IMG/VR virus record: IMGVR_UViG_3300044731_002337
Coordinates: 124,001 to 188,000 of that record
Length of the DNA: 64,000 nucleotides
Strand: one strand, 5' to 3'
Shown in pieces: positions 22,780-51,783 of this stretch. The first letter of the stretch is position 1; each line of letters starts with the position of its first letter. The position numbers and the translations under genes are program-made. The notes beneath the pieces are model-generated. The model saw only the letters and a program-made list of their open reading frames with translations, searched no databases and had not been told where the DNA came from.

Positions 22780-25700
22780 TTATGATGAGCAAGTATTGCA
22801 AACAACTGGTGTAGTAAAATTGAATTTGGTGGGCTTATCAATGGTGCGGAAATAGTAGCTGGCTGTTTTGAGGCCAAGATTCCAAGCAAAGCACCAGTAC
22901 TTGACAACTTCGATCGCCATATTCTCTCCACGTTTCATGTAGACATTGAGACTGATACTTTGGTCGACAAAACGAGAGCGATCGGCAGCCATGAGAGTAA
23001 TTTGGGCAAGTGGGATATCTACAATGGATCGGTAACGTTTCTTAATGTAATCCGGAATGGAAGCAATGTCGGTGAGTGATCCATTATTCGCTAGAATTTC
23101 ATCGTGAACAGGAATGGTAGATTTGGCATCAAATTTCCAAAGACCTGCTTCTTTGAGATCTCGTACCAGGTATTTGTTGAAGACATTGTATTCTCCAGTG
23201 TTCATGTATCGTTTGAAGCTACAGGCCAGGGCAGGTTCAAAGCATTCAAAGTTTCCTAAAATGATGGAAGTACCTGCAGTGGGCATATGAGCCATTAACA
23301 GGGAGTTGAGCATTTTGTTGGGTTTGGTCTTGATATCATGACGTAATTGGTCCCAGTTCCATCCGACACTTGTAGTAATATAGTCATGATGGGGTCTCTT
23401 TTCATAAATCTTTTGAGCCTGATTGTATTTGTCCCATAAATCTTGTTGTAAAATACCGGATTCAATGGGTGATCCAGCGATACTAGGATAATTGCCCCGT
23501 TCTTGAGCCAGGTCATGGGAACCTTTTAGGGCGGCATAATACATGGTTTCAGCGATTTGATAATTGAGACGTTGTGCTTCTTTTGAATCAAAGTCGAGTT
23601 TGAGGATCATAAACACATCTGCGAGTCCTTGAATGCCAATGCCAATAGGTCGATGTCTCATGTTGGAACGCCTTGTAGATTCCAGGGGATAAAAATTGAG
23701 GTCAATGACTTGGTTCATATGGTACACTAGATTATATACCACTTCATACAATTCTTGAAAATCGTATTGATCATCATGGATAAATGCCTTGAGGGAAACG
23801 GAGCACAAATTACAAACCGCGGTTTCTTCTGGTGAAGAGTATTCAATGATTTCTGTGCATAGATTAGATGATTTGATGGTACCGAGATTTTTTTGGTTGG
23901 ATTTGTGGTTACAGTGATCTTTGAATAGGATGTAAGGTCCGCCGGATTCGACTTGTGATTTGACAATGGCGAGGACAAACTCTCGAATGGGAACTTGTGC
24001 TTCATAGAGCCCTTGTGATTCATACTGGAGGTAGAGTTGTTCAAAAGCTTCACCATGCACGTCATCTAGCCCTCGACACTTTTGAGGGTTCATGAGGGAC
24101 CATACTTGTGGTTGATTGTGTTGATAATCTAGAATGATACGTTTCATGAACAAGTCGTTAACCCATAGAGCATAGAATAGGTCAGTAGCTGAAATGGTAT
24201 TGGCGGTCAAGGGGGATTTCAATTCTAAGAATTCCAAAACATCTGCATGCCATGGTTCTAGATAGACTGCAATGCTTCCTTTACGTTTACCACCACCATT
24301 ATGAGCGACCATACAGGATGTGACATAGGATGGGTCGGAGGACCTTTCCATTTCCAGGTCGAAGCAGTCATCAATGGTGGGTGGGCTGTGAATTACATTG
24401 TGAATAGGTAGACAGAGGTAGTTTTGGACTTGTATGCATGGTGTGAGGCGGCGACCATCTTGATCCTTGGGTGGCCATATCATACGGTATTCATTAGGAT
24501 AAATCTCCTCAATCAGAGCAAAAGAATATCCAAGTCGGTTAGCACAATATTCCAACGAATGCTTCTTTTGGGGGGAAACATTCTTTAACGTGGGACCTTG
24601 AAGTTCAAGACCTTCCATGAAATCGGCGACTTGGTCTAAGGGGGCGAATAGAATGGAGGCAGGAATGTCTTGTCGATTACATTGAAGTAGACCCATTAAT
24701 TGACCTTCAGGGATAATGATTTCCGTAGTGGAAAGACAGCGAACAGATACAATGGAAGATAACCAGGTTCGATCAATGTCTGGGCTTAGGAGGTGAAAGG
24801 TGATGAGTCCTTCTTGACATTGCCAGTTCATATCTGCGGTGATGAGGCCCAAGAGTTTTAAGAGATTTGAGTCGACATCAGGGATTCGTTTTTGGAGTTC
24901 AATGGTGTTGCAAATAGCGAGCCAGTGTTTGCGGGGATCGATTTCGTGGATGGTGGTGTAAAAGGGGAGAGCTCTTGATCCAAAGGTGTTGTCAATGACG
25001 AGAATAGGGTGAGAATCGGTGATGCCATGTGATACACGGTGATTAGGGAAAACTAAATGGTGGAATTGGAGTGATTTCTTGGTGGAAATAATTTTCTGAA
25101 TATGGTGAAAGTCTCCAAAACGGTTCATGACAAGATCATTGACTTGTAAGGATTGAATTTTGCGCCAACCAGTGGAAGTCATGACCCGGGTATCACCTTG
25201 AAAGCATTGGTCGACATAGCATGCTACAGAGTTATACACTTTGAGCATGGGTCCTACACCTCCAGTGACTCCATTAGTACCCTTGATATACGAATTCTTG
25301 CTACGGGTATTGTGGATGTTGATGCCAATGCCACCCGAGTGTTTGGAGATGATGCTACATTGCTTCCATCGATCAGCAATACCTTCAATGGAATCATCCC
25401 CAGCATATAAGAGAAAACATGAACTCATTTGGGGATGCATGGTTCCCGCGTTAAAGAGAGTAGGTGTAGCCATGATACATTTGCCCAGAGATAAATAATG
25501 ATACAACTGTATAGCTCTCTTGGTATTCATAGGGTTCAGGGCAATCGCTATTCTCATCCACATAAATTGTGGTTCCTCCAAAGGTACTGACACCATGATA
25601 TGCTGCCCATTATGTTCTACTCGCTTGTAAGTGTTGAGAAGGTATTTGCCATTAATAAGTTGGGTAATCGCCGCACAGTCAAATATAATGTTTCGATCAT

Positions 25701-26124
25701 GGTCAATTGTGGCTTCAATGAGGTCCATGTCAGGAATGTGTTCAAATGATTCGTGTAAGAGTGGTGACAACTCTCCCGTGCGTGGATTCACATTAGCGCG
25801 TGCTAGTCGAACATATTCTTTAAACGAATTTGGGGTGGATTTCTGGAGATTGGAGACTATAATTTGGCCGGCAAAGAGGTTATTGTCTGCAAAATAAGTA
25901 TCATGGGCGGCAACATTCGCAGATATAGTATCGAGTTCAGAGGTGGAAATGCCATCTGTAATTTGGTCAACTGTAGCACGGCATATTTTGAAAATTGACA
26001 CATCAATGGGACGTTTTAAGATACGGGTCATATGATCACGTATCGAGTTAAGACGTGCAGTAATTCGTTGAGGATCAATGGGTTCTTTTGTTCCATCACG
26101 GGTAGTAACACATCGAGGTTCCAT
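22780..26124 (-). CDS. nrdA: Ribonucleotide reductase large (alpha/R1) subunit, class Ia, containing an intein
   Basis: N-terminal ATP cone, ATPTLFNAG, MSSCFLL, GGIG, KGTNG, YVDQ/GGGKRKG, LEPWH, SNLCTEI, RPIGIGIQG, MPTAGTS, DQSIS, C-terminal CxxC. Confidence 0.97.
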   Translation of the reverse strand: MEPRCVTTRDGTKEPIDPQRITARLNSIRDHMTRILKRPIDVSIFKICRATVDQITDGISTSELDTISANVAAHDTYFADNNLFAGQIIVSNLQKSTPNSFKEYVRLARANVNPRTGELSPLLHESFEHIPDMDLIEATIDHDRNIIFDCAAITQLINGKYLLNTYKRVEHNGQHIMVSVPLEEPQFMWMRIAIALNPMNTKRAIQLYHYLSLGKCIMATPTLFNAGTMHPQMSSCFLLYAGDDSIEGIADRWKQCSIISKHSGGIGINIHNTRSKNSYIKGTNGVTGGVGPMLKVYNSVACYVDQCFQGDTRVMTSTGWRKIQSLQVNDLVMNRFGDFHHIQKIISTKKSLQFHHLVFPNHRVSHGITDSHPILVIDNTFGSRALPFYTTIHEIDPRKHWLAICNTIELQKRIPDVDSNLLKLLGLITADMNWQCQEGLITFHLLSPDIDRTWLSSIVSVRCLSTTEIIIPEGQLMGLLQCNRQDIPASILFAPLDQVADFMEGLELQGPTLKNVSPQKKHSLEYCANRLGYSFALIEEIYPNEYRMIWPPKDQDGRRLTPCIQVQNYLCLPIHNVIHSPPTIDDCFDLEMERSSDPSYVTSCMVAHNGGGKRKGSIAVYLEPWHADVLEFLELKSPLTANTISATDLFYALWVNDLFMKRIILDYQHNQPQVWSLMNPQKCRGLDDVHGEAFEQLYLQYESQGLYEAQVPIREFVLAIVKSQVESGGPYILFKDHCNHKSNQKNLGTIKSSNLCTEIIEYSSPEETAVCNLCSVSLKAFIHDDQYDFQELYEVVYNLVYHMNQVIDLNFYPLESTRRSNMRHRPIGIGIQGLADVFMILKLDFDSKEAQRLNYQIAETMYYAALKGSHDLAQERGNYPSIAGSPIESGILQQDLWDKYNQAQKIYEKRPHHDYITTSVGWNWDQLRHDIKTKPNKMLNSLLMAHMPTAGTSIILGNFECFEPALACSFKRYMNTGEYNVFNKYLVRDLKEAGLWKFDAKSTIPVHDEILANNGSLTDIASIPDYIKKRYRSIVDIPLAQITLMAADRSRFVDQSISLNVYMKRGENMAIEVVKYWCFAWNLGLKTASYYFRTIDKPTKFNFTTPVVCNTCSS
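24298..25206 (-). mobile_element. Intein (303 aa) with degenerate LAGLIDADG domain; C-extein +1 residue is Gly
   Basis: Starts CFQGDTRVMT, ends CFDLEM...CMVAHN; removal gives seamless YVDQ-GGGKRKGS; blocks LLGLITADM and FMEGLELQG are eroded LAGLIDADG motifs. Confidence 0.92.
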
Positions 26125-26141
26125 AATTTCTCTTTTTATTA

Positions 26142-27770
26142 TTACGGGTTATTTGGTCTCGGAACTTTAGAACCACGTTTTATAGAATTATTTCCGCGCA
26201 CCTTGGCTCGAAGTACTTCCAAACGTTTAATTCTTTCTTTCGTATCCTCTTCACTTTCCTTGGCGAGTTTCTCACTTTCCACGAATTGTTGTTGAACCTC
26301 TTTGAATGTACTGGCAACACCTTGGTTTTGAGTGACAATATCATGAATCAAAGGGAAAAGTTTGGTGTTATTGACTTTCACAATCTCATCCGAAAGTTCA
26401 AAGACGTTGGACATGAGAATGCATGTAATAAAACGTTCATACATGGGCTGCGTAATATTCCATGAGGATTCCCACGCTTTTTGAGATTCATCAAACATAT
26501 GTTTAAAAAAACCAAGAAATTCCTTCTTTTCTTTATCGTTGGGGATATCATTAAACATACGGTTGATAAATGTAACACCATACGTTTTTCGATCATAGTA
26601 GTCCATGGCATCAATATAGGTCATTTCTTGTTGAATCACTCGATGAAGGACTAATTTATGGAAACCATTGCTAGAACAGAGTGATTTGAAATCAATAGCA
26701 TTTTCGTGATAGTCTACGATTCCAGGAAACTTTTTTGGAATGTTATTGGCCAAGTATTGTAGAGAGAGATAGATGAGAGTCTTGATAATGATGGTGAATG
26801 ATTCTACGGGATTGTCTTTTTGGTAATCTTTCAAGTTGGAAGCATTCATGAGATTAATGAAATGTTCCTTGTGAAAAATATAGAGTTCCATGAATAGGAT
26901 AGTCATAAAACGTACAAATTGAACGATGGTAGCGATTAAGATGAGACGTTTATAATAGTGGGTCCCAGGGACTTTATCACTATACCATGTAATATATGTC
27001 TTTTCATTGGCTTCTTTTTCCAACTCAGGCTTACGTGCAAATGTCTGAAAATCGTGAGCGAGGTAAGTGGAAATGTCATCGGGTAGATAACGGTGTAGAA
27101 AATAAATGTGCATGTATTGAGGTACTGTTCTTCGGTCTTCAATCGAGTCAAAATATGCGTGATCGCGTCGAAATTGTTGACGAACACTTGGCATTTTGAT
27201 GGTAACATAATGGGTGCGAAGAATATCATGATGTTCTTGGAGGAAACGGTGAAATGGTCGACAACAAACAGTGAGGCCCATGTAAAAAGGCATGGATCGA
27301 GGATTGGTACATGAATCTAAAAGTCCTGCTTGTTCTTCACATGCAAATACTCTTTTATACTTTTCAGAAGAAAAAGTCACAGGTAATTTATCGATTTGAT
27401 TGGGGTTTAAAAGTGAGACTTGACGTTTTTCAATGGTTTTACTTTGTAACTGACTAAGACCAGCTGAGATGCTAACATTAAATTTCATAAGATCTTCCTT
27501 CTCGATATCAGACATGATCATTAGTGTTACAAGTGCATCTCCATAATCCTGTTTCATCAATGCATCGTTATATTTGAGTTCAATCAATTGTTGAATTCGA
27601 GTATATTGTTCTTTGGTTTTGGTAAGATCTTGTTTGACTATATTGTTTTGGTCTTGCATGGTATTCTTATCATTGGTGATTAAGCTTACCAGCTGATTGA
27701 CTGCATTTACACTTTCAGCTGAGAAACCAGTATATTGATTGGGTATTGGAGCTGGTTGTAATTGGGACAT
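26142..27770 (-). CDS. Hypothetical protein
   Basis: 542 aa ORF with coiled-coil termini. Confidence 0.7.
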   Translation of the reverse strand: MSQLQPAPIPNQYTGFSAESVNAVNQLVSLITNDKNTMQDQNNIVKQDLTKTKEQYTRIQQLIELKYNDALMKQDYGDALVTLMIMSDIEKEDLMKFNVSISAGLSQLQSKTIEKRQVSLLNPNQIDKLPVTFSSEKYKRVFACEEQAGLLDSCTNPRSMPFYMGLTVCCRPFHRFLQEHHDILRTHYVTIKMPSVRQQFRRDHAYFDSIEDRRTVPQYMHIYFLHRYLPDDISTYLAHDFQTFARKPELEKEANEKTYITWYSDKVPGTHYYKRLILIATIVQFVRFMTILFMELYIFHKEHFINLMNASNLKDYQKDNPVESFTIIIKTLIYLSLQYLANNIPKKFPGIVDYHENAIDFKSLCSSNGFHKLVLHRVIQQEMTYIDAMDYYDRKTYGVTFINRMFNDIPNDKEKKEFLGFFKHMFDESQKAWESSWNITQPMYERFITCILMSNVFELSDEIVKVNNTKLFPLIHDIVTQNQGVASTFKEVQQQFVESEKLAKESEEDTKERIKRLEVLRAKVRGNNSIKRGSKVPRPNNP

Positions 27771-29415: not shown

Positions 29416-29436
29416 AAAAAACAAGAGTATAAAAAA

Positions 29437-30582
29437 ATGTCGGATTATTGTTCGACGCCACAGCCAAGCCATGAAGAGGTCGTGGCTAAGAATACACCGG
29501 ATTATTTTCGCACATTAGAGCAACATCGTACGAATGATACGATCTATGTAGCAGTGAAATATGTATTTATTCAGCAGCATCCAACTGAGCAATTACCATT
29601 ATATCTAGTGCAAGCGAATCATGATCAATTGAATCAGAGTTTTTTGGGTAAGAATGTGCAGGAGATAGATACTTTACCGAATACGAGTAAACAGCCATGG
29701 AAGGATCTAGTAGCAGTAGCGAATATTCAATTTTTACCGTTGAAGAGTAGTGAAGTGACATTGGAGGTATTGACTACGAATAAGGTATTGGATAATCAGA
29801 ATCCATTGAATGATTGTGTGGAGATAGCGTGTAGTCATGATAATATAATTAATGTGTATTTTGCCAAGTTGAGTGGGCAGACGAGTACGTTGGGAATAGC
29901 GAGGTTAGCGTCCAATATTATATTTTGTGATATGCGAACTGTGGGGAGTATAGCTGTCCCAGGAATGATGACTGGATATAGTCTGGGTAAAGTATTGGTA
30001 CATGAAATGGGGCATGCATTAGGGTTGTATCATACATTTTCGGATGCGACTAATCGTTGTGATAATCATAAACGGTATCCGGACATTCCAGAGCAATTGA
30101 GTCCAAATTTTGTAGCATCGGTGGAATACCGTGGTGGTCAATGGGTTCAAGTGAATGATAACCGTGATCGTGAACTCGCCGGTGAATCAGATATTCGCTC
30201 ATGTGCAAAAGTTGTTGGACAAATTGATGGCCAGTTAAGTGAACAAGCAGTCAATTATATGGATTATGCACGCGATCCAGATTCACGAATGTTTACTCAA
30301 AGTCAAGTTGATGTTATGCGAGCCCATTTAGTGAAGCATTCCAATTATACTCGAGAATCTGGTGTGACCACTACGAATACCACTGCAGCACAATCCGCCA
30401 TTCCCGAAGATTGTCATGATGATACCAGTGACTCGAGTGGACTATCAACTGCTGCCATTGTTGGCATTGTCATTGCTGCGGCGACTCTATTAGTTATCAT
30501 CATTGGATTCTTGATATGGAGAAATTATTATCAAGCTCCGATTCGAGAAGAGTTGAGAAATGTAAAACAACAAGAAAGATGA
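29437..30582 (+). CDS. Pappalysin/M43-family zinc metalloprotease, type-I membrane protein
   Basis: HEMGHALGLYHTF, Met-turn NYMDY, MFTQSQVDVMR, C-terminal TM. Confidence 0.9.
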   Translation: MSDYCSTPQPSHEEVVAKNTPDYFRTLEQHRTNDTIYVAVKYVFIQQHPTEQLPLYLVQANHDQLNQSFLGKNVQEIDTLPNTSKQPWKDLVAVANIQFLPLKSSEVTLEVLTTNKVLDNQNPLNDCVEIACSHDNIINVYFAKLSGQTSTLGIARLASNIIFCDMRTVGSIAVPGMMTGYSLGKVLVHEMGHALGLYHTFSDATNRCDNHKRYPDIPEQLSPNFVASVEYRGGQWVQVNDNRDRELAGESDIRSCAKVVGQIDGQLSEQAVNYMDYARDPDSRMFTQSQVDVMRAHLVKHSNYTRESGVTTTNTTAAQSAIPEDCHDDTSDSSGLSTAAIVGIVIAAATLLVIIIGFLIWRNYYQAPIREELRNVKQQER

Positions 30583-31623
30583 GTTGTAATGCATCTCAGA
30601 CATTGGTCCATGCGTGTCGATTCATGGAATGTTTAATGGAAAAAAATGGTGTTAGTAAACAAGAGGTGAAGCATATGTACTCATCTGGACAAGAATGTGC
30701 ATTCTTATATCATCCCAAGATTAGTGTGATATTGTTTCGCCCTGATGATCCTACAACAACAACTTATTTAAAAATGAGTGTGTTAGATCCAGTATTCATT
30801 CCTACCGATACAGTGATTGAACAAGGGAAGAAGAAAACAGAAATACAAACCTCCAACTTAACTGAATCAGTGTGGAAACATTTTAGGGTATTTATTCTTT
30901 TTTTTTTGTCTTTCTCTTGTTTGTTTGTTTAATGTTATGATAGGCTACGTATCCTCTTGTGAAACGATGGATTATGGTCTCCTCAGACATTAATACATTT
31001 ACCAATACTCTATTACTAGAACTAATGTGGATGTCTGAATCAATGTCTATGCAACACTTTAAGTACATTGAATTGGGAGATCCTCGAATTATTACTGAAC
31101 ACAAGTTTCAACCATTGAGTGTGGAAAGAGTGGATAAGGCTCCAACTGAAAACTGTCGACAAATTCTAGTGCATGATATCTTTGCACGATTTTATGGAGC
31201 ACAAGTAGGGCATGTATTGAAATGTCAAGGTATCCATAGACAATCTGGTGAACAAACAGATTATTTACAGGTATATTTTTTTTCGTTTACATGTACTTTA
31301 CAGCTTATACTATGTTTTAGGTATCTTATATTCATTACATTAAAGGAAATAAGTTGAAACCAGCAAAACTTCCAGAACAAGCAAAACAGGAAAGTATTGT
31401 GTTGGAAGAAGAGGAAGAGGAGGATGAGGAACTGGAAGAAGAAGAAGAAGAAGAGGAGGAAGATGAAATAGAGGAAGTACAAGTAGAGGAAGAAACATCA
31501 GAGTCTGAAACTGAATCGGAAGAGGAATCGGAATCCGAGTCTGAGGATGAAGAGGAAGATGAAGATGATTCTGAATCGGATGAGGAGGACGAAGAGGATG
31601 ATGATGATGATGATGAGCAATAA
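30579..31623 (+). CDS. rpb5: RNA polymerase subunit RPB5 homolog with acidic C-terminal tail; three exons join(30579..30887,30944..31270,31321..31623)
   Basis: RPB5 C-domain ITEHKFQP...QILVHDIFARFYGAQVGHVLKC...YLQV; three track ORFs join in frame (939 nt) after removing two GT-AG introns. Confidence 0.8.
30888..30943 (+). other. Spliceosomal-type intron 1 of RPB5 (56 nt, phase 0)
   Basis: AGG|GTATTT...T-rich...TTTAAT...GATAG|GCT; splicing joins WKHFR to ATYPLVKRWIM in the frame of ORF 30959. Confidence 0.8.
31271..31320 (+). other. Spliceosomal-type intron 2 of RPB5 (50 nt, phase 0)
   Basis: CAG|GTATAT...TTTTAG|GTA; joins DYLQ to VSYIHYIKGNKLKPAK in the frame of acidic ORF 31354. Confidence 0.7.
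31405..31616 (+). repeat. Poly-Glu/Asp low-complexity coding repeat
   Basis: GAA/GAG/GAT runs. Confidence 0.9.
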
Positions 31624-31629
31624 ACACAT

Positions 31630-33669
31630 TTATGATAAAGAAGGTGGTTCTGGTGGTTGAGGTGGTGAAATGGAAGGTGAAGTGGGTAAGGAAGCTGGTA
31701 GTATATCTCGCGGTAATGAATCAAATGGAGGTAGATTTGATATCATAGTAATACGTTCATTGATACGTCGTTTCCATTGATCTGTAAAAGGTTGTTGTTC
31801 CAGGTCATCTACCAATGTAACGAAAAAGGGAATAGAAGCCCAGTTAGCTGACGTATGTTGTAAAGCACTTCGTAACGCATCATAAGGTTCTTCTAAAGGA
31901 TATTTCTGTAAAGCATAATTGAAAAAAGTGGATAGTAAATTAGGATTAGGTGGTAGTTCAGTCAGATTTACATAGAGTATTTGTCCATCGAGAGTTGTAG
32001 CTTGTTGAGTGAGCAAGTTGTACTGCATGACTTGTGGACTATAATCAAAAAACTTACGAATGGTAGCAAACACTTGATTGGCTTGTTGGCGAGTAAGTTC
32101 ACCTCGAATATCTAATTGCCGTTGTGGGTTAAGTTGTTTTCGCAAATACTCCCGTTTACTTAATCGATTAAATGCAGACCTAAATTCAATAGCACTTGAA
32201 AGTTTCATGGATGGGAAATGGTTAGCGTCATTATTAGTCGACATCATCTCTAGTTGAGAAGGATCTTGTTCGCGGCGTTGTACAACTTCATAAATAGGGG
32301 TTTTCAATAATTCATTCAATGTATGTGTATTTCTTTCATGTAATTCTTTGGCCTTGTCACGAACATCTGCTCGAGCTGGAATGACTGCAACGACGGGTTG
32401 GGCAGCGACTTCAGCCACATTATCTTTTTGAATGAGATTTCCTAGGCAAGTAGTAAATTGTTTAATGGCATCATAATTATCAATTTGAATATTGGCGGAT
32501 GCAGCCTTTCGATCATCATCTGGTGGCGTTGGAGCCGGATGTTTCATAAAATAAAGCAACATATCAAACATGGTCGTCAATAAATAATTCGCATTTGCCG
32601 CATCGAGTTCATATTCCTCAGTAAGAATTTGAAATAGATTGATTTGGGGATCACATGCATATTGATTGTCACCAAACAGGAAATTGGCTACATCATCTTC
32701 ATTTTGAGTGTACTTGCGAAATACATCTATAACATTCTTCCTAGTTTTGCATTTGAGTGTTATGTTATTACGGCGATATAAGGATAAGGCTGCAGTGCGC
32801 CAGGAAATGAGAAACTCGCATGCATATTGATGGTTTAGAATTTGACTACGATCTTCAGGAAAGCTGTAGGTTACGTGTGTGAATACATGGGAGAAAATAT
32901 TGGCAAAGTTGGAGGAGCTTTGATTGGTATGTCTCCAGAATAAGTTGAAAGGTGATTGTTTGAATTCAAATACCTTTTTGTTGTTCAAAGCTCGTGGTTT
33001 CAAGTGTTTGATGGGGCATGATTTATGTTTGTAGAGTCCACCTTGTTTATCTTGTGTGGATAAAGGTTCATGGCAAGCGGGGCACTGAATAGGTTTTTGG
33101 AAACATTCATGACAGACAGCATGTTCTTCTACGCCTTGATTATGAGTGTCGCAAACATAGTTCGTTTTGCAATAAAAACATGGGGCTATATTGGTGCGTG
33201 ATTGACATTCGTAGCATGTGATGGGGCATTTATGGTTGAATTCTTGTATGCCGCAAATGGGGCACTTTTGGATGGTGATGGTTGTACCTCCATATTCGGT
33301 GAGAACTGGGGAGCCATTATCTAATAGGGTGGATTTGAGACGATGAATGCGTAGCCAAGTGATGGTAATAGGATCGACATCCGTTTTGGGTAAGTACCAT
33401 TCTTTGGAGACGTCATAATAGGTATCTGTCTTATTTTGGAAGCGCATGAAATCGTACCATACGAGATCACCACGGACATGTCTACGCCAATAGACTTGAT
33501 GTTGACCTAATGAGAGGGATGGACAATGACGAATATCATCAGGTGGAATAACTTGGGGTAATGTTTTGGGTAAAGAATAAGGAGGCATCAATGGTCGAAG
33601 ATATTGTTCTTGAAAACATCTTATAAATGGTATTTCATTCTCATGATAACAAGAAGGTAAATGAATCAT
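31630..33669 (-). CDS. Hypothetical protein with multiple CxxC zinc-binding motifs
   Basis: CPICG, CYEC, CFYC, CHEC, CPACH. Confidence 0.7.
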   Translation of the reverse strand: MIHLPSCYHENEIPFIRCFQEQYLRPLMPPYSLPKTLPQVIPPDDIRHCPSLSLGQHQVYWRRHVRGDLVWYDFMRFQNKTDTYYDVSKEWYLPKTDVDPITITWLRIHRLKSTLLDNGSPVLTEYGGTTITIQKCPICGIQEFNHKCPITCYECQSRTNIAPCFYCKTNYVCDTHNQGVEEHAVCHECFQKPIQCPACHEPLSTQDKQGGLYKHKSCPIKHLKPRALNNKKVFEFKQSPFNLFWRHTNQSSSNFANIFSHVFTHVTYSFPEDRSQILNHQYACEFLISWRTAALSLYRRNNITLKCKTRKNVIDVFRKYTQNEDDVANFLFGDNQYACDPQINLFQILTEEYELDAANANYLLTTMFDMLLYFMKHPAPTPPDDDRKAASANIQIDNYDAIKQFTTCLGNLIQKDNVAEVAAQPVVAVIPARADVRDKAKELHERNTHTLNELLKTPIYEVVQRREQDPSQLEMMSTNNDANHFPSMKLSSAIEFRSAFNRLSKREYLRKQLNPQRQLDIRGELTRQQANQVFATIRKFFDYSPQVMQYNLLTQQATTLDGQILYVNLTELPPNPNLLSTFFNYALQKYPLEEPYDALRSALQHTSANWASIPFFVTLVDDLEQQPFTDQWKRRINERITMISNLPPFDSLPRDILPASLPTSPSISPPQPPEPPSLS

Positions 33670-33696
33670 GTTTGTTTTTTTTTTCTTGTTTTTTTT

Positions 33697-38028: not shown

Positions 38029-38980
38029 TCATTGGATTACGGGAAAGGGAAGTAGTTCATTCACAGAAATATTTTCAGCAATGGCGATAATGGTGTCTGT
38101 AACTTGTTTCCATGTAAAAGGTAGTGATTGTGAGGGACCAGAAATGATCCATTGTGCATCACGGTATTCGCATGCCACAACAGCATTCTTGGGGAGAGGA
38201 TAAGGACAAATAGCGGCCGAAATGATGACATTATCTTTGGATTTGAGTAGATAGTCGCCTTGATAGAAGCGGTAGTATTGTACTGTCGAAGGAGTTCCAT
38301 CAGGCCAAGGTAATTCTCGAATCGATTCAAATGGTTGAATAGTACAATAAATGCGATGTGATCGTAATCGTAATTGGGGTATTACTTTAGATCCGTATGA
38401 TGATGAAGAAGAAGAAGAAGAAGATAATGCTTCAGATGAAGTATCCATGAAATCCAAGGCTTCAATAGGTAGCATGTAGGTAAATTTTAGAATATGACTC
38501 ATTTCCACTAGTGGTTTGACATGAAGTCCAAAGGGAATTTCAGGATGATGCACTACCTTATTATACAATGTGGGGTAAAGTGATGATTTCACTACGCAAG
38601 GGGATACAGAGATGGAGGTAGTTGAAGCAGTAGGACATTTCGAGATCATTTGAATGGCTTGAATGGCTAATTCCCATCGTTGATCGTACCTGAGATGTTT
38701 GGCAGGGTTTCCACACATCATATAACAATCCATAATCGTAAAGCAAAATCCTTGGTCGTTAAGTTGAACCATTTCTCCATCGAGTACGGTTCCAGCAAAT
38801 AATGGGATAGGTAGTTTGGAAGGCATATGTTTCAGTTTGGTGGTCTTCTTTTGTTGATCCATGAGAAAGAGTTGTATGCAGTTCTTGTATGTGGTGAATA
38901 ATAATAGCCCGCGGATACCATTTAAGTAAGGTACCATGACATAACGTTGAGGTTGGAATTCGAGTTTCTTGGGTCGAAAG
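38029..38980 (-). other. Degenerate mRNA-capping guanylyltransferase plus OB domain fused to RPB1
   Basis: YVMVPYLNGIR (motif I KxDG changed to YLNG), TVLDGEMV (III), FTIMDCYMMCG (IIIa), YDQRW, VVACEY...W, TIIAIAENISVNELL. Confidence 0.75.
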
Positions 38981-41900
38981 GGGATTACATCTTGAATCAT
39001 TTGAAAGTGATAGCCACTACCAAGACCCATATTCTTATTGCACATGGCAGCAGCTGCAATAGTATTCCCTGGATCCCACCTTCCCATATCTACATTTTCC
39101 ATAACGTGTCTAGATGACTCTTCAAACGAGGCTTGCTGCATAGGTGCAATACGTTTGGCAGCTTCATTCTTCTTGTATCCTTCATGTATACCAGTCATGG
39201 TCATGTATCGAGCCATGAGTTCCAAGTGTCGTGCATCAGTAGAATCTCCCATGACTAACACGAATTCATGGGTCAACACTTGGGTTGTGGCATAAACGCC
39301 CATAAACTTTTGGGTATCGCCGGTATGAGTGCTGTACGATTGCTGAACATCGACTAATGGGTGCGTATTCCAAATTGAAAAATCAGATTGGTCCGTAATG
39401 CATACCCAGCGATTTGAAGCTTGTTGTTCAATAATATACTTGGAGATGCCATCCAATTTACCCCTCACAATGGTTTGGTGAAAGATATTGTAAGCGACGC
39501 CGTACAGGGCATGTGTGGTTGGATTCTTGACCTTGCACTTGATTTGTCTCAAGGCGAAAGTCCAAATGCCCACGGAAGGTGTTAAACGAATACAAAATAG
39601 GGTCTTGTCTACTTTGTGAATCGCGGAAATGGGAATTTGGATGGTATGGTGTAATGCGAGAATGATATTGTAGTCTTGTACCAAATAATATGCTTTGAGC
39701 TTCGGGTCAATATGGAGGCGGATAGTCATACTTGATTCATCAATCTTAGGGTAGTCAGAGAGGATTTCAGAGAGATATACAGTTCTCCAGGTCATGGCCG
39801 TATAATGGACTTCAGCTTCCGTGACATGAGGTAGAAAGACAATATTCATCATGGCTAGGCTATTATTGGCATCAATCAAGTTATTCAATTTGTTGACTCC
39901 TGTAACTTGCGTATTCTTTTTCCCAGAGGAGTGAGGCGACTTTAAATTACCTTGTGTGTATACTTCTCCCACACTATGAGTCGCATTCATTCCAATAGCT
40001 TCTCCTGGCAAAATGGTTCTTCTTTGTATCGTATGGTAAATCAATCGAAGTAACTTGTACCAGGCAACACTAGACAACTTCCATACCACCAATACATTAT
40101 GAGGGCAGCACCACACACGTAATAAAACATGAAGCTTGTGGTGTTGGGCAGGAACAAGTCTCTCCTTGACCATACTTTGCCAGATATAGGTAAACGACGT
40201 AATGATTTCGGTTTCCATAAGATCAGGTGATGAAGTATAAGTGGTGGCTTGTTGAAAGAGATGCTTGATATGAAAGGGAGATTTGAATGTCAAGTCTTGA
40301 TCCTTGATTTTATCCCAAAGTAACCATGACTCACGATAGAATACATGATGATGATGATTAGGCCAAAGTTCTAGAGTTGGCGGTGTAATTGTTTCCCATA
40401 CCAAGTATTGAGGGTCAAGAGAATCACCTCCATAAGTAAACCAAACGGTTGGACCAGGTTTATGGATATCTTCTTTGCGAAAGGCATGTTGTCTTCGATT
40501 GCCAGAATAACTGTCTACTGCATGGCCAAAAGTGTCTGCAATAATACCCATATTACAATAGGCCATCTTCTTCTCCAAGTAGCCTGATTGTGAAGTACCC
40601 TTGATCTTGTTGATCACTGATTCCGTGGTAGGTTGTGCTTGGGTCATTAGATCATGAAAAGTGAGACCCATAGCATAAGGATGTTTGATAAAGCCATGCG
40701 CTACAAGTGATTTGTCGTGAGGGTGGAAATGGCTAGTCACATTAGGAATTCGTTCATGTGTGAGATACGCTTGTCCCACAACACCCATCATTTGAGATAA
40801 GGATGCCCAATTTGCCTTGGTGCCACTTTGAATCATAGCCAAGTATCCATTGTGTAACGTATTTCGATCCCTTGCTGTTACCAACTCTTCAATCCGATCT
40901 TGAATCGACTTGGTGTAAAACTGAATGTGCTGTCCAACTACATCTTCAGGTTGCTCCTGCATATTTTGAAGCTTGTGATAATTGGGACATGAATCCGCAT
41001 CTTCCCAATACATTTGGTGATAGCTACAAGAGTGTCCACGCATGTCTAGATATTCTTGGGTGATTAGATAGCCTTCATACAGGAAATCCATGGCTTCATC
41101 GAGGGAATGGTACATGATGATATCTCTAAGGACGCCATTGAGAACTTTTTCCGTAAACACGGTATGAATGTGAATGGAGCTAGGTAGGATACAATGCATC
41201 ACTTGTCTCCCGGTCCATAATTGGCGAGGTTTCCAAACTGCAGGTGGAGGTATGGTGATGAACCGAGTCACATGTCCTAGTAACACCGAGACTTGATCCT
41301 TGGTCAAAAATGTATCTTCATGGGTCAATAAAAAAGCGCCAATCACTGGATTTTGACTGAATTTAATCCATAGTCCTCCATCTTTCATGGTGTGAAACTT
41401 GACCGCCATAATCTCCATCACCTCTGCCCGAGCTTCAATGGTTTGAGGAATGTGTACACTTAGTTCATCGCCATCACAATCCGCATTAAAAGGTAAAAAA
41501 ACACTCACGTGAAGATTAATGACAAACGAATTGGGAATCACTTTGACTTTGAATCCCATAGTCGATCCACGATGGAGTGTTGGTGCTCGATTCACAATCA
41601 CCCAATCATCCTCCAAAATGTGACGACGAACATAAGCCACGTCATGCACGTTAATGTCGCGACGGTTATCATAGTATTCCAAATCAATGGTGCGTCCATC
41701 CTTCATTTGCATGGAATTGGCGCCAGGATAGTGATGTGGGCCATTCAAAATCCATTTGTGAGCTTGGTTCATGTTGAAGGAAGATACGGGGACGTTAATG
41801 GTCAGTCCCATACATGTGGATTGCGGGAGGCCACAGTAAGTAGGGTGAATCCATGTACAACCTTCCAATACAAGTCGTGCATAATGATATTTTCGCCACG

Positions 41901-43109
41901 CCACAATAAAGCCTTGCATACGGCTACTTTGTTTCGATTTGCTAGTCTTCTTAAACTTGGTATCCACTGAATTGGGGGTTTTACCATATTGGGCATTCTT
42001 GGGGATTAGTTTGCGATACTTTTCAAAGTGGAATGCAGAGATTTGGTTTTGGAGGTTTCGCCAGGCACATTGATTGGTCACGTTGCCACAAGACGCTTCA
42101 TTGGAAAGTTTACATTTGCTCAGTTTCTGGTTAATGAGTTGAAGCTGGGCCCGGTATTGTTGCCGTTGTTGAATATTGAGTTGTTTTCGTTCTTCGCTGG
42201 TTAAGGATTCTTTTTGAAAGCAAACTTTAAAATCTGGATGAATGAATCCCTTGTATAGATATTGGGAAAGAATAATGGGGTCCTTGGATTGTTGCAATTT
42301 CATTTCGAGTAAAAGTTTGCTTTGGAGGACATTTTTGAGCATCTTGGTCCAATCATTGGGGTATTGTTTAGAGCCATTTTTGGTAGGGAAAGTACTATTA
42401 GGTCTAGTGGTGAGTGCCGGGACAGCTAGAGCCGAAAACATTCGAGCCTTGGGTAAGTTGTATTGTCCAAGTCCCATAATATGCATCATTTGTTCATTCT
42501 TCGAAATGTCCTCCAAGAGTTTTTGAATTTCAAATGGACCAAACGAAATGGGCTTCCATGATGGATTGGATTGGTAAAGTTGAAAATCAGTCTTGGAAAG
42601 TGTTACAACTCCCCGTATAATATTATCATGACCCGATTCTGTTGTCCATTTGATATAGGATTTACCACATTCACATGCCCTGAAGAAACGAGTATATTTA
42701 AGTAACGTATTGAGTCGTTTTTCAGAGGGTAGTTGAAGAACTTTCTCGCACATATGGGAAGTAATGCGGAGGCGTTGACAATAAAAGCAAACTAGATTGA
42801 GTATTTTCAAAAGGGTTGACATGGCGCCTACATGGAAACAGGGAATAGGTAATTCCATATGTCCAGTATGTCCAGGACAATTATGGGTTGTCTCTCCACA
42901 TTGCTCACATAATGAATCCCATGATTTACATCCCAAAACACCTACAAGAAGAAAAGTAAAGAAAGATCAAAGGGCGAAAAAAAAAATGTACCTGAAGTAA
43001 GATCTGTATTGGTTTTGATTTCTAATACACTTTGTTTACGAACACGATCCGAGTCAATAAGGAAACATTGTAATGCATCTACTTCACGTAATGGTGGAAG
43101 TGAATCCAT
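38029..43109 (-). CDS. rpb1: RNA polymerase largest subunit (RPB1) with fused C-terminal guanylyltransferase-like domain; exons complement(join(38029..42941,42992..43109))
   Basis: CEQC...CPGHTGH, CFYC, NRAPTLH, FNADCDGDE, GTSQSGYLEKK, PGEAIG, EVYTQGNLKSPHSSG, LGSGYHF; exon 1 supplies RVRKQSVLEI; spliced length 5031 nt is in frame; an upstream in-frame ATG at 43178 is possible. Confidence 0.93.
42942..42991 (-). other. Spliceosomal-type intron in RPB1 (50 nt, phase 1)
   Basis: CAG|GTACAT...polypyrimidine...TTGTAG|GTG; joins TDLTSG to VLGCKSWDSLCEQC. Confidence 0.85.
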
Positions 43110-43161: not shown

Positions 43162-43419
43162 TTATTTGGTAATGACAACTGTAGTGCGTGGTGATTTGGT
43201 GAACCAATCTTTGATAGAGGTAAGAATTTGTACGGAATATTTGATGAGGATAAAGGCTACACGAACAAAGATGAGAAAGGATAGTAGGGCAATAATGACG
43301 ATCAGATATGTTTTGTAATTGGTTTCAGGGGGTGTTGGATTTGGATTGGTTGAAAGGTTTTGTAAAAAGGCTTCATCTAGTTTAGCTAATTCTTCTGGCG
43401 TTGGAGATTTCAAAGACAT
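43162..43419 (-). CDS. Small single-TM protein
   Basis: 85 aa with a TM (YLIVIIALLSFLIFVRVAFILI). Confidence 0.6.
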   Translation of the reverse strand: MSLKSPTPEELAKLDEAFLQNLSTNPNPTPPETNYKTYLIVIIALLSFLIFVRVAFILIKYSVQILTSIKDWFTKSPRTTVVITK

Positions 43420-43485
43420 TTCTCTTTTTTTTTTATTTTACTTTGCTTATGGTTTTTTTTTTCTCCGATAGGGGATAGAATCATA

Positions 43486-46437: not shown

Positions 46438-46490
46438 TTAATAAACTATTTTTTTTTTATTTTTATTGTGAATCACACACATGTATTTGT

Positions 46491-48245: not shown

Positions 48246-48343
48246 TTTTTTTCGGTAAGTCTTCTTTTTGTTTTTTTTTATGCAGTGTGTAAAAAAATTT
48301 TTCAAGGACTCAAGAACATGTAGATAAAAAAAAAAGATTATGT

Positions 48344-48790: not shown

Positions 48791-48871
48791 TTATATATAC
48801 TTTTTTTTTTCTAATATTTGTGACTGGATCTTTTTTTATTTCGCGTTTGTTCCGATCTGGAGGGGACATAG

Positions 48872-49804: not shown

Positions 49805-51783
49805 ATGGATAACAATATATGTCCTGTTTGTTCAATTCAATGTGCCAATGTCGAGTCATTTCGTGACCATGTAGCCCATGAACATGAAGACTATAAACAT
49901 TTTGCATGTGAATTGCATATTGCGGAACAACCTTGCAAGGCTAGATACAAGTATAAGAAGGATCTACTCATTCATCAAAAGAAAGTGATTCATGATCAAG
50001 TGAGGCAATATGTATCTCCAGCGTATCATCAACTAAGATTAAGGACAAAACATGCTACGTCATGGGTGCATTGGACCTCATTGTATGTTCAATATAAATC
50101 TCCCAGTGATCCGGTATTGTCGAATGAGCAAAAAATGTCAGTGGAGCAGTTGATGAGTAGGCTGAAGCAGGAGGAGATGTGGGTGGAAGAAGCAGTTTAT
50201 GATTCATGGCAATTTGAAGAAATGGTGGAGCAATTGGAGAATTATTGGAATCAGGCCAAGACAATTGGAAATCAATTACGTCTATTATTTTGGCATGTCC
50301 TGTATAAGTTCTGTGTGGATCCTTTACTTTCGGATTCGGTGGTTCATTTTTTACACAAGAGGTCCAGTAAATATTTTATCAAGGCGACCAAAATTGTGCA
50401 AGGATCATTAGGTGTACAAATCATGGACCCTTATCAAATGGTGGAACTACGTTATCGAATCTTGGTAGAACTTCAAAAGCAACAGCAAGAAGTATTGGAT
50501 CCATTTATTCTTCAATACTATCGTGAGAGATCATCTAAGATGCCATTACTCGAGTTTGGATTGAAATTAAGGTGTTGGATAGATTTGATGATTCGGTTTA
50601 CCAATATTCCTATGAGAATTCAAGCGACCAAGGAACTTCATTTAGGGTATCCGTTTCGAAAGACGGATGTGGCCGAACATCATGTGGCAAGATTATTATA
50701 TGAGAATGGTGTCTTTACCCGTTTATTCATGTTTGATAAAGTGGGCAAAACAGGTAAGCATTAATGATTTTTTTGTTTGTTTGTTTGTTGTTAACTATGC
50801 ACAAAAAAGGTGCTCATCGTCCAATTCGATGTCCTTTACCAGGATTTATAACTCCTTACTTATTATTCTACATTAAGTATTGTCGACCAACGGAAAAGGA
50901 GAATTCCTTGGTATTTCTCAATGCGACGGGCAGTGCATGGAAACAAGCATCAAGGGATATTAAGATGTATATGCAAGATGTATTGGACATTCAAGTGAAT
51001 GCATTAGATCCTTCAGGTCGTTTTGTTCATGGGTCAAGGTCTATCATGTTGGCGAATTATGCATTGCGTGTACGATTTGATCCATTGAAGTTACAACAAT
51101 TTGCTACCTTGATGAGACATTCGTTTGCGACGATGAATTCTTATTACTTGTTATGGACGGATTGGGCGACAGCGAGACTTGCCATGTCCGACTTTAATCA
51201 AGCGTTTGGTTTATCTGCCCCCGAAGAAAAACCATGTGATTTTTCAGCCTTTGATGTCCATTTTTCTTTCACTCAGGGTATAATGGAAGAAAAAGAAGTA
51301 TCGCCACAGATTGAAACATTATCATGTAAACCTGCAGTAAATTCTCGTTCATTCGAAGAGGTAACATCGTCATTCGAAGAGGTAACTTCTGGTTCATTTG
51401 AAGGGGTAACATCGTCATGCAAACCTTTGGTAACTTCTGGTTCATTTGAAGGGGTAACATCGTCATGCAAACCTTTGGTAACTTCTGGTTCATTCGAAGA
51501 GGTAACATTGTCATGCAAACCTGCGGAAACATCGTCATGCAAACCTGCGGTACAAGAGCAAAAGAGTGGAAATGGTTGTGACAAGTGTGGTAAAGTAATG
51601 ACGATTTATGGTCCTTATGGGAAGAGGAAGCATGTGAAGCAATATGGATGTTATTGGTATGAATGTAAGGATTGTGAGTTGAAGAAATGGATACCATTAG
51701 GATATATGACGGAATATAGTCATTCACGAAAATCCAAGAATCACGATAAGATTATGGCATTTATTAAAGCTTCTTTGAAATAA
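49805..51783 (+). CDS. C2H2 zinc finger plus tyrosine-recombinase-like protein; exons join(49805..50753,50810..51783)
   Basis: N-terminal CPVC...HVAHEH and C...HQKKVIH; TNIPMR, DK, HGSR, MRH and SYY give the R-K-H-R-H-Y set; two track ORFs join in frame (1923 nt). Confidence 0.7.
50754..50809 (+). other. Spliceosomal-type intron (56 nt, phase 1)
   Basis: CAG|GTAAGC...TTAAC branch-like...AAAAG|GTG; the spliced product DKVGKTGAHRPIRCPL aligns with the intronless paralog DDKNMNSHLPIIVPV. Confidence 0.85.
51314..51550 (+). repeat. Tandem array of 48-bp GGTAAC-family units and sub-units inside the CDS
   Basis: VTSGSFEGVTSSCKPL repeats with degenerate flanking copies. Confidence 0.9.

What the first reader, a model, noticed from the sequence alone, without database searches (positions are those of the whole stretch)
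31271..31623. RPB5 intron 2 appends a long poly-acidic tail; alternative C-termini are possible
Seen: splicing 31271..31320 fuses RPB5 to a tail of about 100 aa dominated by Glu, Asp and Ser. Intron retention, or the in-frame CAG acceptor at 31303, would instead give a short hydrophobic tail. Established: RPB5 contacts downstream DNA, and acidic tracts often act as DNA mimics or histone-chaperone-like elements. Inference: splicing may select between two RPB5 isoforms; the acidic one could help displace nucleosomes or basic core proteins during transcription.
Basis: partly seen in the sequence, partly recalled or inferred. Interest (0 to 1): 0.65.

Follow-up and report, generated by a model that had tools for sequence, protein, structure and literature searches.

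The report
Giant-virus RPB5 with acidic tail
A giant virus's RNA polymerase subunit RPB5 is interrupted by two genuine introns and ends in a 100-residue, extremely acidic tail found in all seven detectable relatives, so the tail is most likely a fixed part of the enzyme and not a splicing option.

Summary
The gene has exon 1 at 30579..30887, a 56-nt intron, exon 2 at 30944..31270, a 50-nt intron at 31271..31320, and exon 3 at 31321..31623. Both introns are GT..AG and T-rich. Five related viruses encode the same protein as one uninterrupted ORF of 312-337 aa. The three window exons tile onto these ORFs with no gap or overlap, so both splice junctions are confirmed by homology. A sixth relative (L013) has introns at the same two positions.

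The protein is a real two-domain RPB5: Pfam passes just above cut-off on the orthologue, and the top 44 Foldseek hits are all RPB5 or RpoH. The canonical RPB5 fold ends at the exon 2/3 junction. Exon 3 adds a conserved Lys/Pro linker and a 71-residue tract that is 79% Asp/Glu.

The complete tails are 92-118 aa. Net charge is -48 to -55 in six viruses and -34 in the most distant. No cellular or ASFV RPB5 seen here has such a tail.

The isoform-switch idea is unsupported but could not be tested, because no RNA run was listed. My best mechanistic guess is a tethered polyanion at the DNA-entry side of the polymerase, like the Rpc31/RPC7 acidic tail of Pol III. I rate it a new variant of a known kind.

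The parts
30579..30887 (+). RPB5 exon 1 (103 codons), the N-terminal 'jaw' module. Its ATG overlaps the TGA of the upstream M43 peptidase gene (ATGA).
   Evidence: Aligns end to end with residues 1-99 of the contiguous orthologue P0002.
30888..30943 (+). Intron 1: 56 nt, GT..AG, 66% T, phase 0.
   Evidence: Absent from five contiguous orthologues, which read WKxFR straight into xxYPxVKRW. L013 has a 42-nt intron at the same position.
30944..31270 (+). RPB5 exon 2 (109 codons): the end of the N-terminal module plus the C-terminal globe (RNA_pol_Rpb5_C).
   Evidence: Pfam PF01191 scores E 0.039 on this exon alone and 23.7 bits against a 23.5 cut-off on orthologue P0002.
31271..31320 (+). Intron 2 (the finding): 50 nt, GT..AG, 54% T, phase 0. 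It sits at the boundary between the RPB5 fold and the tail.
   Evidence: Orthologues read DYLQ straight into V[AST][YF]x[HY]SIK. L013 has a 43-nt intron at the same position.
31302..31303 (+). It would make a 33-nt intron and a 17-residue hydrophobic tail.
   Evidence: There is no evidence that it is used. It lies 2 nt after a CTTTAC motif that is also present 16 nt before the acceptor of the RPB1 intron; this is inference.
31321..31377 (+). Exon 3, first 19 codons: the conserved pre-acidic linker VSYIHYIKGNKLKPAKLPE.
   Evidence: Three Lys are invariant among the four full-length orthologues aligned, and Leu-Pro also in the full-length alignment. The same motif is present in L013.
31378..31404 (+). 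Exon 3: nine codons (QAKQESIVL) between the conserved linker and the acidic tract; not conserved.
   Evidence: this stretch differs among the relatives.
31405..31617 (+). Exon 3, poly-acidic tract: 71 residues, 56 Asp/Glu and 10 Ser/Thr. In the whole 100-aa tail, 9 of 12 Ser/Thr sit in S/T-x-x-D/E context.
   Evidence: It is an imperfect repeat (66-85% matches). Codon position 1 is 65% G and position 2 is 71% A, while position 3 is mixed, which is a coding signature.
31621..31623 (+). Stop codon TAA of the spliced RPB5. It lies 6 nt from the stop of the convergent gene (31630..33696, minus strand).
31355..31357 (+). TGA that would end the intron-retained or alternative-acceptor reading frame.
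42942..42991 (-). Supporting feature: a 50-nt GT..AG, T-rich intron in RPB1 (phase 1), of the same style as the RPB5 introns.
   Evidence: The sister virus reads TDLTSGILGCK without interruption.

Best explanation
Shown (about 0.95 sure): the locus encodes one spliced, 312-codon RPB5 subunit of a giant-virus RNA polymerase. Exons 1 and 2 make a complete two-domain RPB5. Exon 3 adds a conserved Lys/Pro-rich linker and a disordered poly-Asp/Glu/Ser tail of net charge about -53. The extension is a conserved, constitutive feature of a small, deep-branching clade of uncultured giant viruses.

Inferred (about 0.4 sure): the tail is a tethered polyanion at the DNA-entry side of the enzyme. RPB5 forms the lower jaw, where downstream DNA enters. 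In free polymerase the tail would occupy the basic DNA channel and keep the enzyme off non-promoter DNA. Promoter DNA would displace it when loaded. This is what has been proposed for the Asp/Glu tail of Pol III subunit Rpc31/RPC7, whose pre-acidic region cross-links to RPB5 at the DNA-entry surface. Here the same device would be wired directly onto RPB5.
For: Gene structure:
- The exons tile without gap or overlap on contiguous orthologues.
- The acidic frame has no ATG.
- The gene order Rv2179c-like gene, M43 peptidase, RPB5, convergent gene is the same in the relatives.

RPB5 identity:
- PF01191 is at cut-off on P0002, residues 149-220 matching profile positions 3-70 of 73.
- phmmer alignments to plant and fly RPB5 stop 3 residues before those proteins end.
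- In the AF2 model residues 1-227 are folded and 228-322 have pLDDT below 50.
- The top 44 Foldseek hits are all RPB5 or RpoH, including ASFV 8q3b_E.
- RPB1 and RPB2 lie in the same window.

Selection on the tail:
- Seven complete tails of 92-118 aa have net charge -53, -52, -53, -55, -48, -51 and -34, although their sequences differ.
- The linker is conserved.
- Codon periodicity is present.
- The folded body is near neutral, net +3 to -2.

Mechanistic precedent:
- The RPB5 N-terminal module contacts downstream DNA 15-20 nt ahead of the bubble, and the globe binds Rpb1 next to the Bridge helix and Switch 1 (PMC1802627).
- Subunit H, the globe homologue, is proximal to downstream DNA (PMC2847245).
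- The Rpc31/RPC7 acidic tail sits in the active-site tunnel of unbound Pol III. It is proposed to block non-specific DNA. Its pre-acidic region cross-links to Lys94 of ABC27 (Rpb5) at the DNA-entry surface (PMC10201443).
Against: - There is no RNA, protein or structural data for this virus. No RNA run was listed.
- The mechanism rests on position and charge alone. A histone or basic-protein chaperone role fits the same facts.
- The tail is longer than the Rpc31 tail (about 47 residues) and is not homologous to it.
- Ser/Thr in CK2-like context are more typical of chaperone-type acidic regions.
- The path from the RPB5 C-terminus to the cleft was not modelled.
- AF2 gives no docked conformation. 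The tail is simply predicted disordered.
Confidence: 0.4

Rival explanations
1. The tail is a built-in chaperone for histones or other basic proteins. Held at the leading edge of the polymerase, it captures basic DNA-packaging proteins stripped from downstream DNA, as the acidic disordered regions of Nap1, nucleoplasmin and FACT do. This would let a viral polymerase that lacks a CTD pass through chromatinised or protein-coated templates.
For: - Position of RPB5 at the downstream DNA entry (PMC1802627).
- Asp/Glu tracts interspersed with Ser/Thr in S/T-x-x-D/E context: 6-9 sites in six of the seven complete tails.
- Acidic IDRs of histone chaperones act by DNA charge mimicry (PMC10987829, listed).
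- Spliceosomal introns imply a nuclear phase in which host histones are present.
- The RPB1 ORF shows no heptad CTD, so CTD-recruited host elongation chaperones may be unavailable.
Against: - No histone-fold gene was found in the 295-kb record, although the record is only about 55% complete.
- No chaperone fold accompanies the tail.
- The most distant relative has only one S/T-x-x-D/E site.
- Nothing is known of how this virus packages its DNA.
Confidence: 0.25
2. The tail is a generic polyanion with no role at the DNA channel. It could keep the subunit soluble, drive the polymerase into a viral-factory condensate, or bind basic core proteins so that the enzyme is packaged into virions.
For: Composition and net charge are conserved, not sequence. 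The tail is predicted fully disordered. Blocks of basic linker followed by an acidic tract are typical of condensate-forming and packaging tails (general knowledge).
Against: Only three strongly acidic tracts exist in the record, so this is not a genome-wide habit. The tail always sits on the same subunit with a conserved linker, which argues for a position-specific role.
Confidence: 0.2
3. One reading: splicing of intron 2 is regulated and selects between a tailed RPB5 and a tail-less RPB5. The tail-less form would come from intron retention or from the AG at 31303.
For: - The RPB5 fold is complete at the end of exon 2, so a tail-less product could fold.
- The intron lies exactly at the fold/tail boundary.
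- It is present at the same position in a second, non-sister virus, L013, where retention also stops early.
Against: - Five relatives have no intron and make only the tailed form.
- The alternative tails are not conserved and are what a T-rich intron encodes by default.
- The AG at 31303 would make a 33-nt intron, shorter than all six homology-validated introns (38-56 nt).
- No spliced or unspliced transcript-derived protein of this virus is on record, and no RNA run was listed.
Confidence: 0.08
4. The acidic ORF is not translated. It would be an open frame produced by chance in a GA-rich 3' untranslated repeat.
For: Low-complexity GAA/GAG/GAT DNA keeps several frames open, on the minus strand as well. 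TRF finds period-3, -6 and -9 arrays.
Against: - The same frame stays open for 92-118 codons in seven viruses and is contiguous with RPB5 in five.
- The linker motif is conserved at the protein level.
- Variation is concentrated at codon position 3.
- Close strain pairs differ by in-frame indels only (L010 versus P0014 and L009 versus P0015).
Confidence: 0.02

Closest known systems
RPB5 / RPABC1 of eukaryotic Pol I-III, ASFV RPB5 (D205R; chain E of 8q3b) and archaeal RpoH
   Same: Two-domain fold with an N-terminal jaw module and a C-terminal globe. PF01191 matches, and every top structural hit is RPB5 or RpoH. The gene lies with RPB1 and RPB2 in one viral genome.
   Different: The solved RPB5 chains are 185-222 aa and end about 3 residues after the last strand. 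This protein continues for about 100 more residues with net charge -53. Sequence identity to any solved RPB5 is only 10-20%.
Acidic C-terminal tail of Pol III subunit Rpc31 (yeast) / RPC7 (human)
   Same: Both are Asp/Glu tails at the C-terminus of a polymerase subunit, preceded by a conserved pre-acidic region. In Pol III the tail lies in the active-site tunnel of the free enzyme, and the pre-acidic region sits at the DNA-entry surface next to RPB5 (PMC10201443).
   Different: The carrier subunit is different and there is no sequence homology (no Rpc31 family hit). The viral tail is roughly twice as long. Localisation in the tunnel is not shown here.
Other polymerase-borne or polymerase-targeting DNA mimics: sigma70 region 1.1, the Pol I expander (DNA-mimicking loop), the Maf1 acidic tail, T7 Ocr
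   Same: All are negatively charged elements that occupy or point into the DNA-binding cleft and compete with DNA. Maf1's acidic tail emerges toward the DNA-binding cleft (10.1101/859132). Ocr is covered in PMC7064336 (listed). The sigma70 region 1.1 and Pol I expander cases come from general knowledge.
   Different: None is attached to RPB5. Several of them are folded, not disordered.
Acidic disordered regions of histone chaperones (Npm2, Nap1, FACT)
   Same: Long Asp/Glu tracts with Ser in CK2-type context, acting by DNA charge mimicry (PMC10987829, listed).
   Different: No chaperone core domain is present here. The carrier is a polymerase subunit. No histone gene was found in the record.
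Spliceosomal-type introns in giant-virus genes (known from pandoraviruses, molliviruses and chloroviruses; general knowledge)
   Same: Short GT..AG introns interrupt core genes, including RNA polymerase subunits.
   Different: The clade here is AT-rich and has no close named relative: outside the clade the best RPB2 match is 27% identical. Intron presence varies between close relatives.

Membership tests
RPB5 / RpoH (Pfam PF01191, RNA_pol_Rpb5_C) | Sequence match to the C-terminal globe profile above the curated cut-off. | tested here: met
   Orthologue P0002 (66% identical to exon 2) scores 23.7 bits against a 23.5 cut-off, E 4e-05, covering profile positions 3-70 of 73. Window exon 2 on its own scores only 14.2 bits, E 0.039. 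The joined window protein was not searched.
RPB5 / RpoH | Two-module fold: a eukaryote-type N-terminal jaw module plus the C-terminal globe. | tested here: met
   The AF2 model of P0002 has residues 1-227 folded. The top 44 Foldseek PDB hits are all RPB5 chain E or archaeal subunit H, with TM-score 0.5-0.59 by target. The model is of the orthologue, not of the window protein.
RPB5 / RpoH | Assembles with the largest subunit in a multisubunit RNA polymerase. | not testable with these tools
   Context only: RPB1 and RPB2 are encoded in the same window.
RPB5 / RpoH | The protein ends just after the last strand of the globe. | tested here: not met
   Solved RPB5 chains end about 3 residues after the aligned position. 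This clade continues for 92-118 residues. This is the variant feature and does not affect membership of the fold family.
Spliceosomal-type intron | GT..AG boundaries, with removal restoring a frame collinear with intron-less homologues. | tested here: met
   for both RPB5 introns. for the RPB1 intron.
Spliceosomal-type intron | Spliced junction observed in RNA. | not testable with these tools
   No RNA run was listed for this sequence, so read laying could not be used.
Regulated alternative splicing (isoform switch) | The intron and the alternative product are conserved among relatives. | tested here: not met
   Five relatives lack the intron. One relative (L013) has it, but with an unrelated retained-frame peptide.
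Rpc31/RPC7-type polymerase acidic tail (functional analogy only) | C-terminal Asp/Glu tract on a polymerase subunit, preceded by a conserved pre-acidic region. | tested here: met
   The description of Rpc31 is taken from PMC10201443.
Rpc31/RPC7-type polymerase acidic tail | Homology to Rpc31/RPC7. | tested here: not met
   Pfam scans of exon 3, P0002 and P0003 give no Rpc31 family hit. The resemblance is functional and compositional only.
Rpc31/RPC7-type polymerase acidic tail | The tail occupies the DNA tunnel of the free enzyme and is displaced by DNA. | not testable with these tools
   This needs cryo-EM, cross-linking or biochemistry.
Histone-chaperone acidic IDR | Binds histones or other basic DNA-packaging proteins. 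| not testable with these tools
   Only the composition fits. No histone fold was found in the partial record.

The most novel reading that the evidence does not exclude
A deep-branching clade of uncultured giant viruses has built accessory transcription modules directly into its polymerase subunits. On RPB5 this is a tail of about -50 charge that acts as a DNA-mimicking gatekeeper or chromatin plough at the downstream DNA entrance. It would have evolved independently of the Pol III Rpc31 tail. On RPB1 it is a capping-enzyme-like domain in place of a CTD. In some members an old intron at the fold/tail boundary would allow a tail-less form to be made by intron retention.
Probability: 0.3. Interest if true: 0.7.

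Novelty: new variant of a known kind. Interest (0 to 1): 0.5.

Why it matters
RPB5 is shared by all eukaryotic nuclear polymerases and is conserved in archaea and many giant viruses. I found no RPB5 with a long acidic extension among the solved structures or in the papers searched.

A conserved charge of about -50, tethered at the point where downstream DNA enters, is a simple and testable device. Possible tests are deleting it, transplanting it, or measuring competition with DNA or histones.

If it gates the DNA channel, evolution would have reached the Pol III Rpc31 solution a second time on a different subunit. If it handles basic proteins, a viral polymerase would be carrying its own elongation chaperone.

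The locus also gives homology-validated examples of spliceosomal-type introns that come and go in polymerase genes of closely related giant viruses. Finally, public gene calls currently split this protein into three 'hypothetical' ORFs.

Tried and rejected
- **RNA evidence.** The look-up of sequencing runs listed no RNA run, so read laying was never called and isoform ratios are unknown.
- **Single-sequence searches.** The scan of viral contigs and the word search found only the virus itself. Four other samples carry a 100% identical copy, so they give no comparative signal.
- **Joined model left out.** The exons were used separately by reference, and the contiguous orthologue P0002 stood in for fold and family tests.
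- **My first guess, rejected.** I thought SYIHYIK was the missing last strand of the globe. Pfam and PDB alignments place that strand at EQxDYLQ in exon 2. The AF2 strand only runs about 3 residues past the junction.
- **My interim conclusion, rejected.** I thought the RPB5 introns were unique to the window virus. L013 has introns at the same two positions plus a third. By pairwise identity and an M43-gene tree, L013 is not the window's sister.
- **RPB6 substitution idea, inconclusive.** I asked whether the tail replaces a missing acidic N-tail of RPB6. No RPB6 hit was found, but the record is about 55% complete and its proteins are very divergent.
- **Histone and capsid searches.** Histone (PF00125) and NCLDV capsid (PF04451) searches of the record were negative. 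The capsid control rang nowhere, so that negative result is uninformative.
- **Complex prediction not used.** The polymerase cleft exceeds the size limit, and a disordered polyanion would not give a meaningful score.
- **Literature.** Searches for RPB5 acidic tails in giant viruses found nothing relevant.

Full report
**What the window is**

The window is bases 124001-188000 of a 294,773-bp IMG/VR virus record that CheckV rates about 55% complete. It encodes RPB1, RPB2, both ribonucleotide reductase subunits, an SNF2 helicase and a protein kinase, so it belongs to a giant virus of the nucleocytoplasmic large DNA virus kind.

Its RPB2 has relatives at 78% and 56% identity. The next best match is only 27% identical, and none of the matches is named beyond a generic subunit label. 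The virus therefore belongs to a small, deep-branching, uncharacterised clade. The host is unknown. I cannot exclude that the record is an endogenous viral element in a eukaryote, but the same sequence occurs 100% identical in several independent samples.

**The observation**

Reading the sequence gives this gene model:

| Part | Coordinates | Notes |
|---|---|---|
| Exon 1 | 30579..30887 | 103 codons; the ATG overlaps the upstream gene's TGA |
| Intron 1 | 30888..30943 | 56 nt, GT..AG, 66% T |
| Exon 2 | 30944..31270 | 109 codons |
| Intron 2 | 31271..31320 | 50 nt, GT..AG, 54% T |
| Exon 3 | 31321..31620 | 100 codons |
| Stop | 31621..31623 | TAA |

- Both introns are phase 0.
- Retaining intron 2 gives 28 mostly hydrophobic codons and a TGA at 31355-31357.
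- The AG at 31302-31303 is in that same frame and would give 17 codons.

**Are the introns real?**

No RNA run was listed, so the test had to be comparative. A full HMMER search of 1.84 billion representative proteins with exon 2 found two proteins of 322 and 312 aa, P0002 and P0003. Each is a single ORF in its own genome with the same neighbours: an Rv2179c-like gene, an M43 peptidase, this gene, then a convergent gene.

Aligning the three window exons as separate rows shows that they tile onto these proteins with no gap or overlap at either junction. A metagenome scan and a profile word search added L009, L010, P0014 and P0015, which are also uninterrupted.

A further relative, L013, is interrupted. 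It has GT..AG introns of 42 and 43 nt at exactly the window's two positions, plus a 38-nt intron elsewhere. Each of these is validated by collinearity with the contiguous proteins.

A third intron of the window's style (50 nt, 60% T) interrupts RPB1 at 42942..42991 on the minus strand. The sister virus reads straight through that site. Splicing is thus established by homology, not by reads.

The joined three-exon protein was never built or searched. Exons were used by reference, and the contiguous orthologue P0002 served for family and fold tests.

**Is it RPB5, and where does RPB5 end?**

- Exon 2 alone gives a sub-threshold PF01191 hit.
- P0002 reaches 23.7 bits against a 23.5 cut-off, covering profile positions 3-70 of 73 and ending at residue 220.
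- phmmer alignments to plant and fly RPB5 end at residue 221 of P0002, three residues before those proteins stop.
- An AlphaFold2 model of P0002 is folded for residues 1-227 and has pLDDT below 50 for residues 228-322.
- Its top 44 Foldseek matches in the PDB are all RPB5 or archaeal subunit H, including the African swine fever virus polymerase.

The canonical RPB5 is therefore complete at the exon 2/3 junction (Q222|V223 in P0002), and exon 3 is a pure extension.

**Anatomy and conservation of the extension**

The extension has two parts:

- **Linker.** A 19-residue segment (consensus SIKGNKxKPxKLPE) has three Lys invariant in both alignments and Leu-Pro in the full-length one, across proteins that are only 40% identical overall.
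- **Acidic tract.** In the window this is 71 residues with 56 Asp/Glu and 10 Ser/Thr.

Whole tails are 92-118 aa. Their net charges are -53 (window), -52, -53, -55, -48, -51 and -34, the last in the most distant member. L013's contig ends inside its tail, so it is not counted. The folded body is near neutral.

The tail sequences themselves are poorly alignable, and close strain pairs differ by in-frame indels. The DNA is an imperfect repeat. G dominates codon position 1, A dominates position 2, and position 3 is mixed.

The frame has no ATG, so it cannot be an independent gene. Public gene calls make it one only by using a TTG start. Only three strongly acidic tracts exist in the whole record. 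Selection is therefore acting on charge and length at this particular spot.

**The isoform hypothesis**

Five relatives have no intron, so they can only make the tailed protein. The hydrophobic alternative tails are what any T-rich intron encodes, and nothing like them exists in the relatives.

The AG at 31303 would give a 33-nt intron. The six introns validated here are 38-56 nt long. That AG also lies 2 nt after a CTTTAC that fits a branch-site consensus and recurs 16 nt before the acceptor of the RPB1 intron. This last point is inference.

On the other side, the intron at the fold/tail boundary is shared by two members that are not sisters. The window is 60-61% identical to all of L013, L005, L009 and L010, while L013 is 66-71% identical to the intron-less L005, L009 and L010. 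An M43-gene tree pairs L013 with L005 at 84/90 support.

The intron is therefore probably old and was lost repeatedly. Retention would yield a foldable tail-less RPB5 in both viruses. I put regulated retention at about 0.08. Only RNA data can settle it.

**How it most likely works**

[quoted passage not shown] The globe binds Rpb1 next to the Bridge helix and Switch 1 (PMC1802627). Subunit H, the globe homologue, is proximal to downstream DNA (PMC2847245).

The closest working precedent is the Asp/Glu tail of Pol III subunit Rpc31/RPC7. In unbound human Pol III it lies in the active-site tunnel and is proposed to keep the enzyme off non-promoter DNA. Its conserved pre-acidic region cross-links to Lys94 of Rpb5 at the DNA-entry surface, and DNA loading displaces it (PMC10201443).

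The viral protein has the same layout, a conserved pre-acidic linker followed by an acidic tail, attached directly to RPB5. I therefore favour a tethered DNA-mimic or gatekeeper role (about 0.4). The rivals are:

- a chaperone for histones or other basic proteins at the leading edge of the enzyme (about 0.25), which fits the CK2-like Ser sites and the nuclear phase implied by the introns;
- a non-specific polyanion role in solubility, condensates or packaging (about 0.2).

None of these is tested. Position, charge, disorder and conservation are shown; the rest is inference.

**Novelty**

The solved RPB5 chains seen here are 185-222 aa and lack any such tail. Literature searches found no report of one. 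All database members of this clade are unnamed or labelled 'hypothetical'.

This is a new variant of a known kind: a bona fide RPB5 with a conserved poly-acidic extension. It is of moderate interest in its own right. Interest would be higher if the tail proves to gate the DNA channel or to handle chromatin.

Noticed in passing
window 38647..38949 (-), inside the RPB1 ORF 38029..42966: The RPB1 ORF has no heptad CTD. Its last 300 or so residues give a weak mRNA capping-enzyme (PF01331) match, E 3e-4, below cut-off. An NGIRG motif sits where a KxDG-type motif would be expected (from memory, not checked). This may be an RPB1 fused to a capping-like domain.
   Followed up: partly
window 42942..42991 (-); L013:1926-1967, 2166-2203 and 2336-2378: Spliceosomal-type introns come and go among close relatives. 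The RPB1 intron is absent from the sister virus. L013 shares both RPB5 intron positions with the window and has a third, while five relatives have none. Intron-bearing genes use AGG and CAG at the exon ends where intron-less genes use CGA and CAA.
   Followed up: partly
whole record G000:C1 (the window is 124001-188000): The + strand has G well above C (22.4% against 15.6%, skew about +0.2) along about 280 kb, whatever the gene orientation. The skew flips only in the last 15 kb or so. This is a strand-wide mutational asymmetry without the usual switch.
   Followed up: partly
G000:C1:1-80 (outside the window): The left end of the record is a tandem array of a 27-nt unit beginning AGTTACCTCTTCG, and the right end is CA-rich. 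These may be terminal repeats of a linear genome.
   Followed up: no
window 22780..26148 (-): The ribonucleotide reductase large subunit is 1121 aa. It has a weak Hint-domain match at residues 314-361, between the all-alpha and barrel domains. This is probably an intein.
   Followed up: no
window 29416..30582 (+): An M43-type zinc metallopeptidase (HEMGH motif) with a C-terminal membrane anchor lies directly upstream. Its TGA overlaps the RPB5 ATG. The gene pair is syntenic in all relatives.
   Followed up: partly
window 30579..31623; L002-L004: Public gene calls split the RPB5 gene into three 'hypothetical' ORFs of 117 (98 on one contig), 127 and 89 aa, the last starting from a TTG. The contiguous orthologues are also unnamed.
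   Followed up: yes
window, many intergenic sites, for example 760-790, 33680-33710, 46450-46480, 48800-48830: Runs of about 10 A or T lie just upstream of many genes, often with a TGTGA/TCACA motif nearby. This may be a promoter element.
   Followed up: no
window 43405..43472 (+), 48250..48290 (+), 50753..50800 (+): Further T-rich GT..AG stretches look like introns. A strict pattern scan found 9 candidates in the record, including the 3 validated ones.
   Followed up: no
G000:C1:268662-269387 and 279315-280673 (outside the window): These are the only other strongly acidic tracts in the record. One lies in a 242-aa ORF and one at the C-terminus of what looks like a protein kinase.
   Followed up: no
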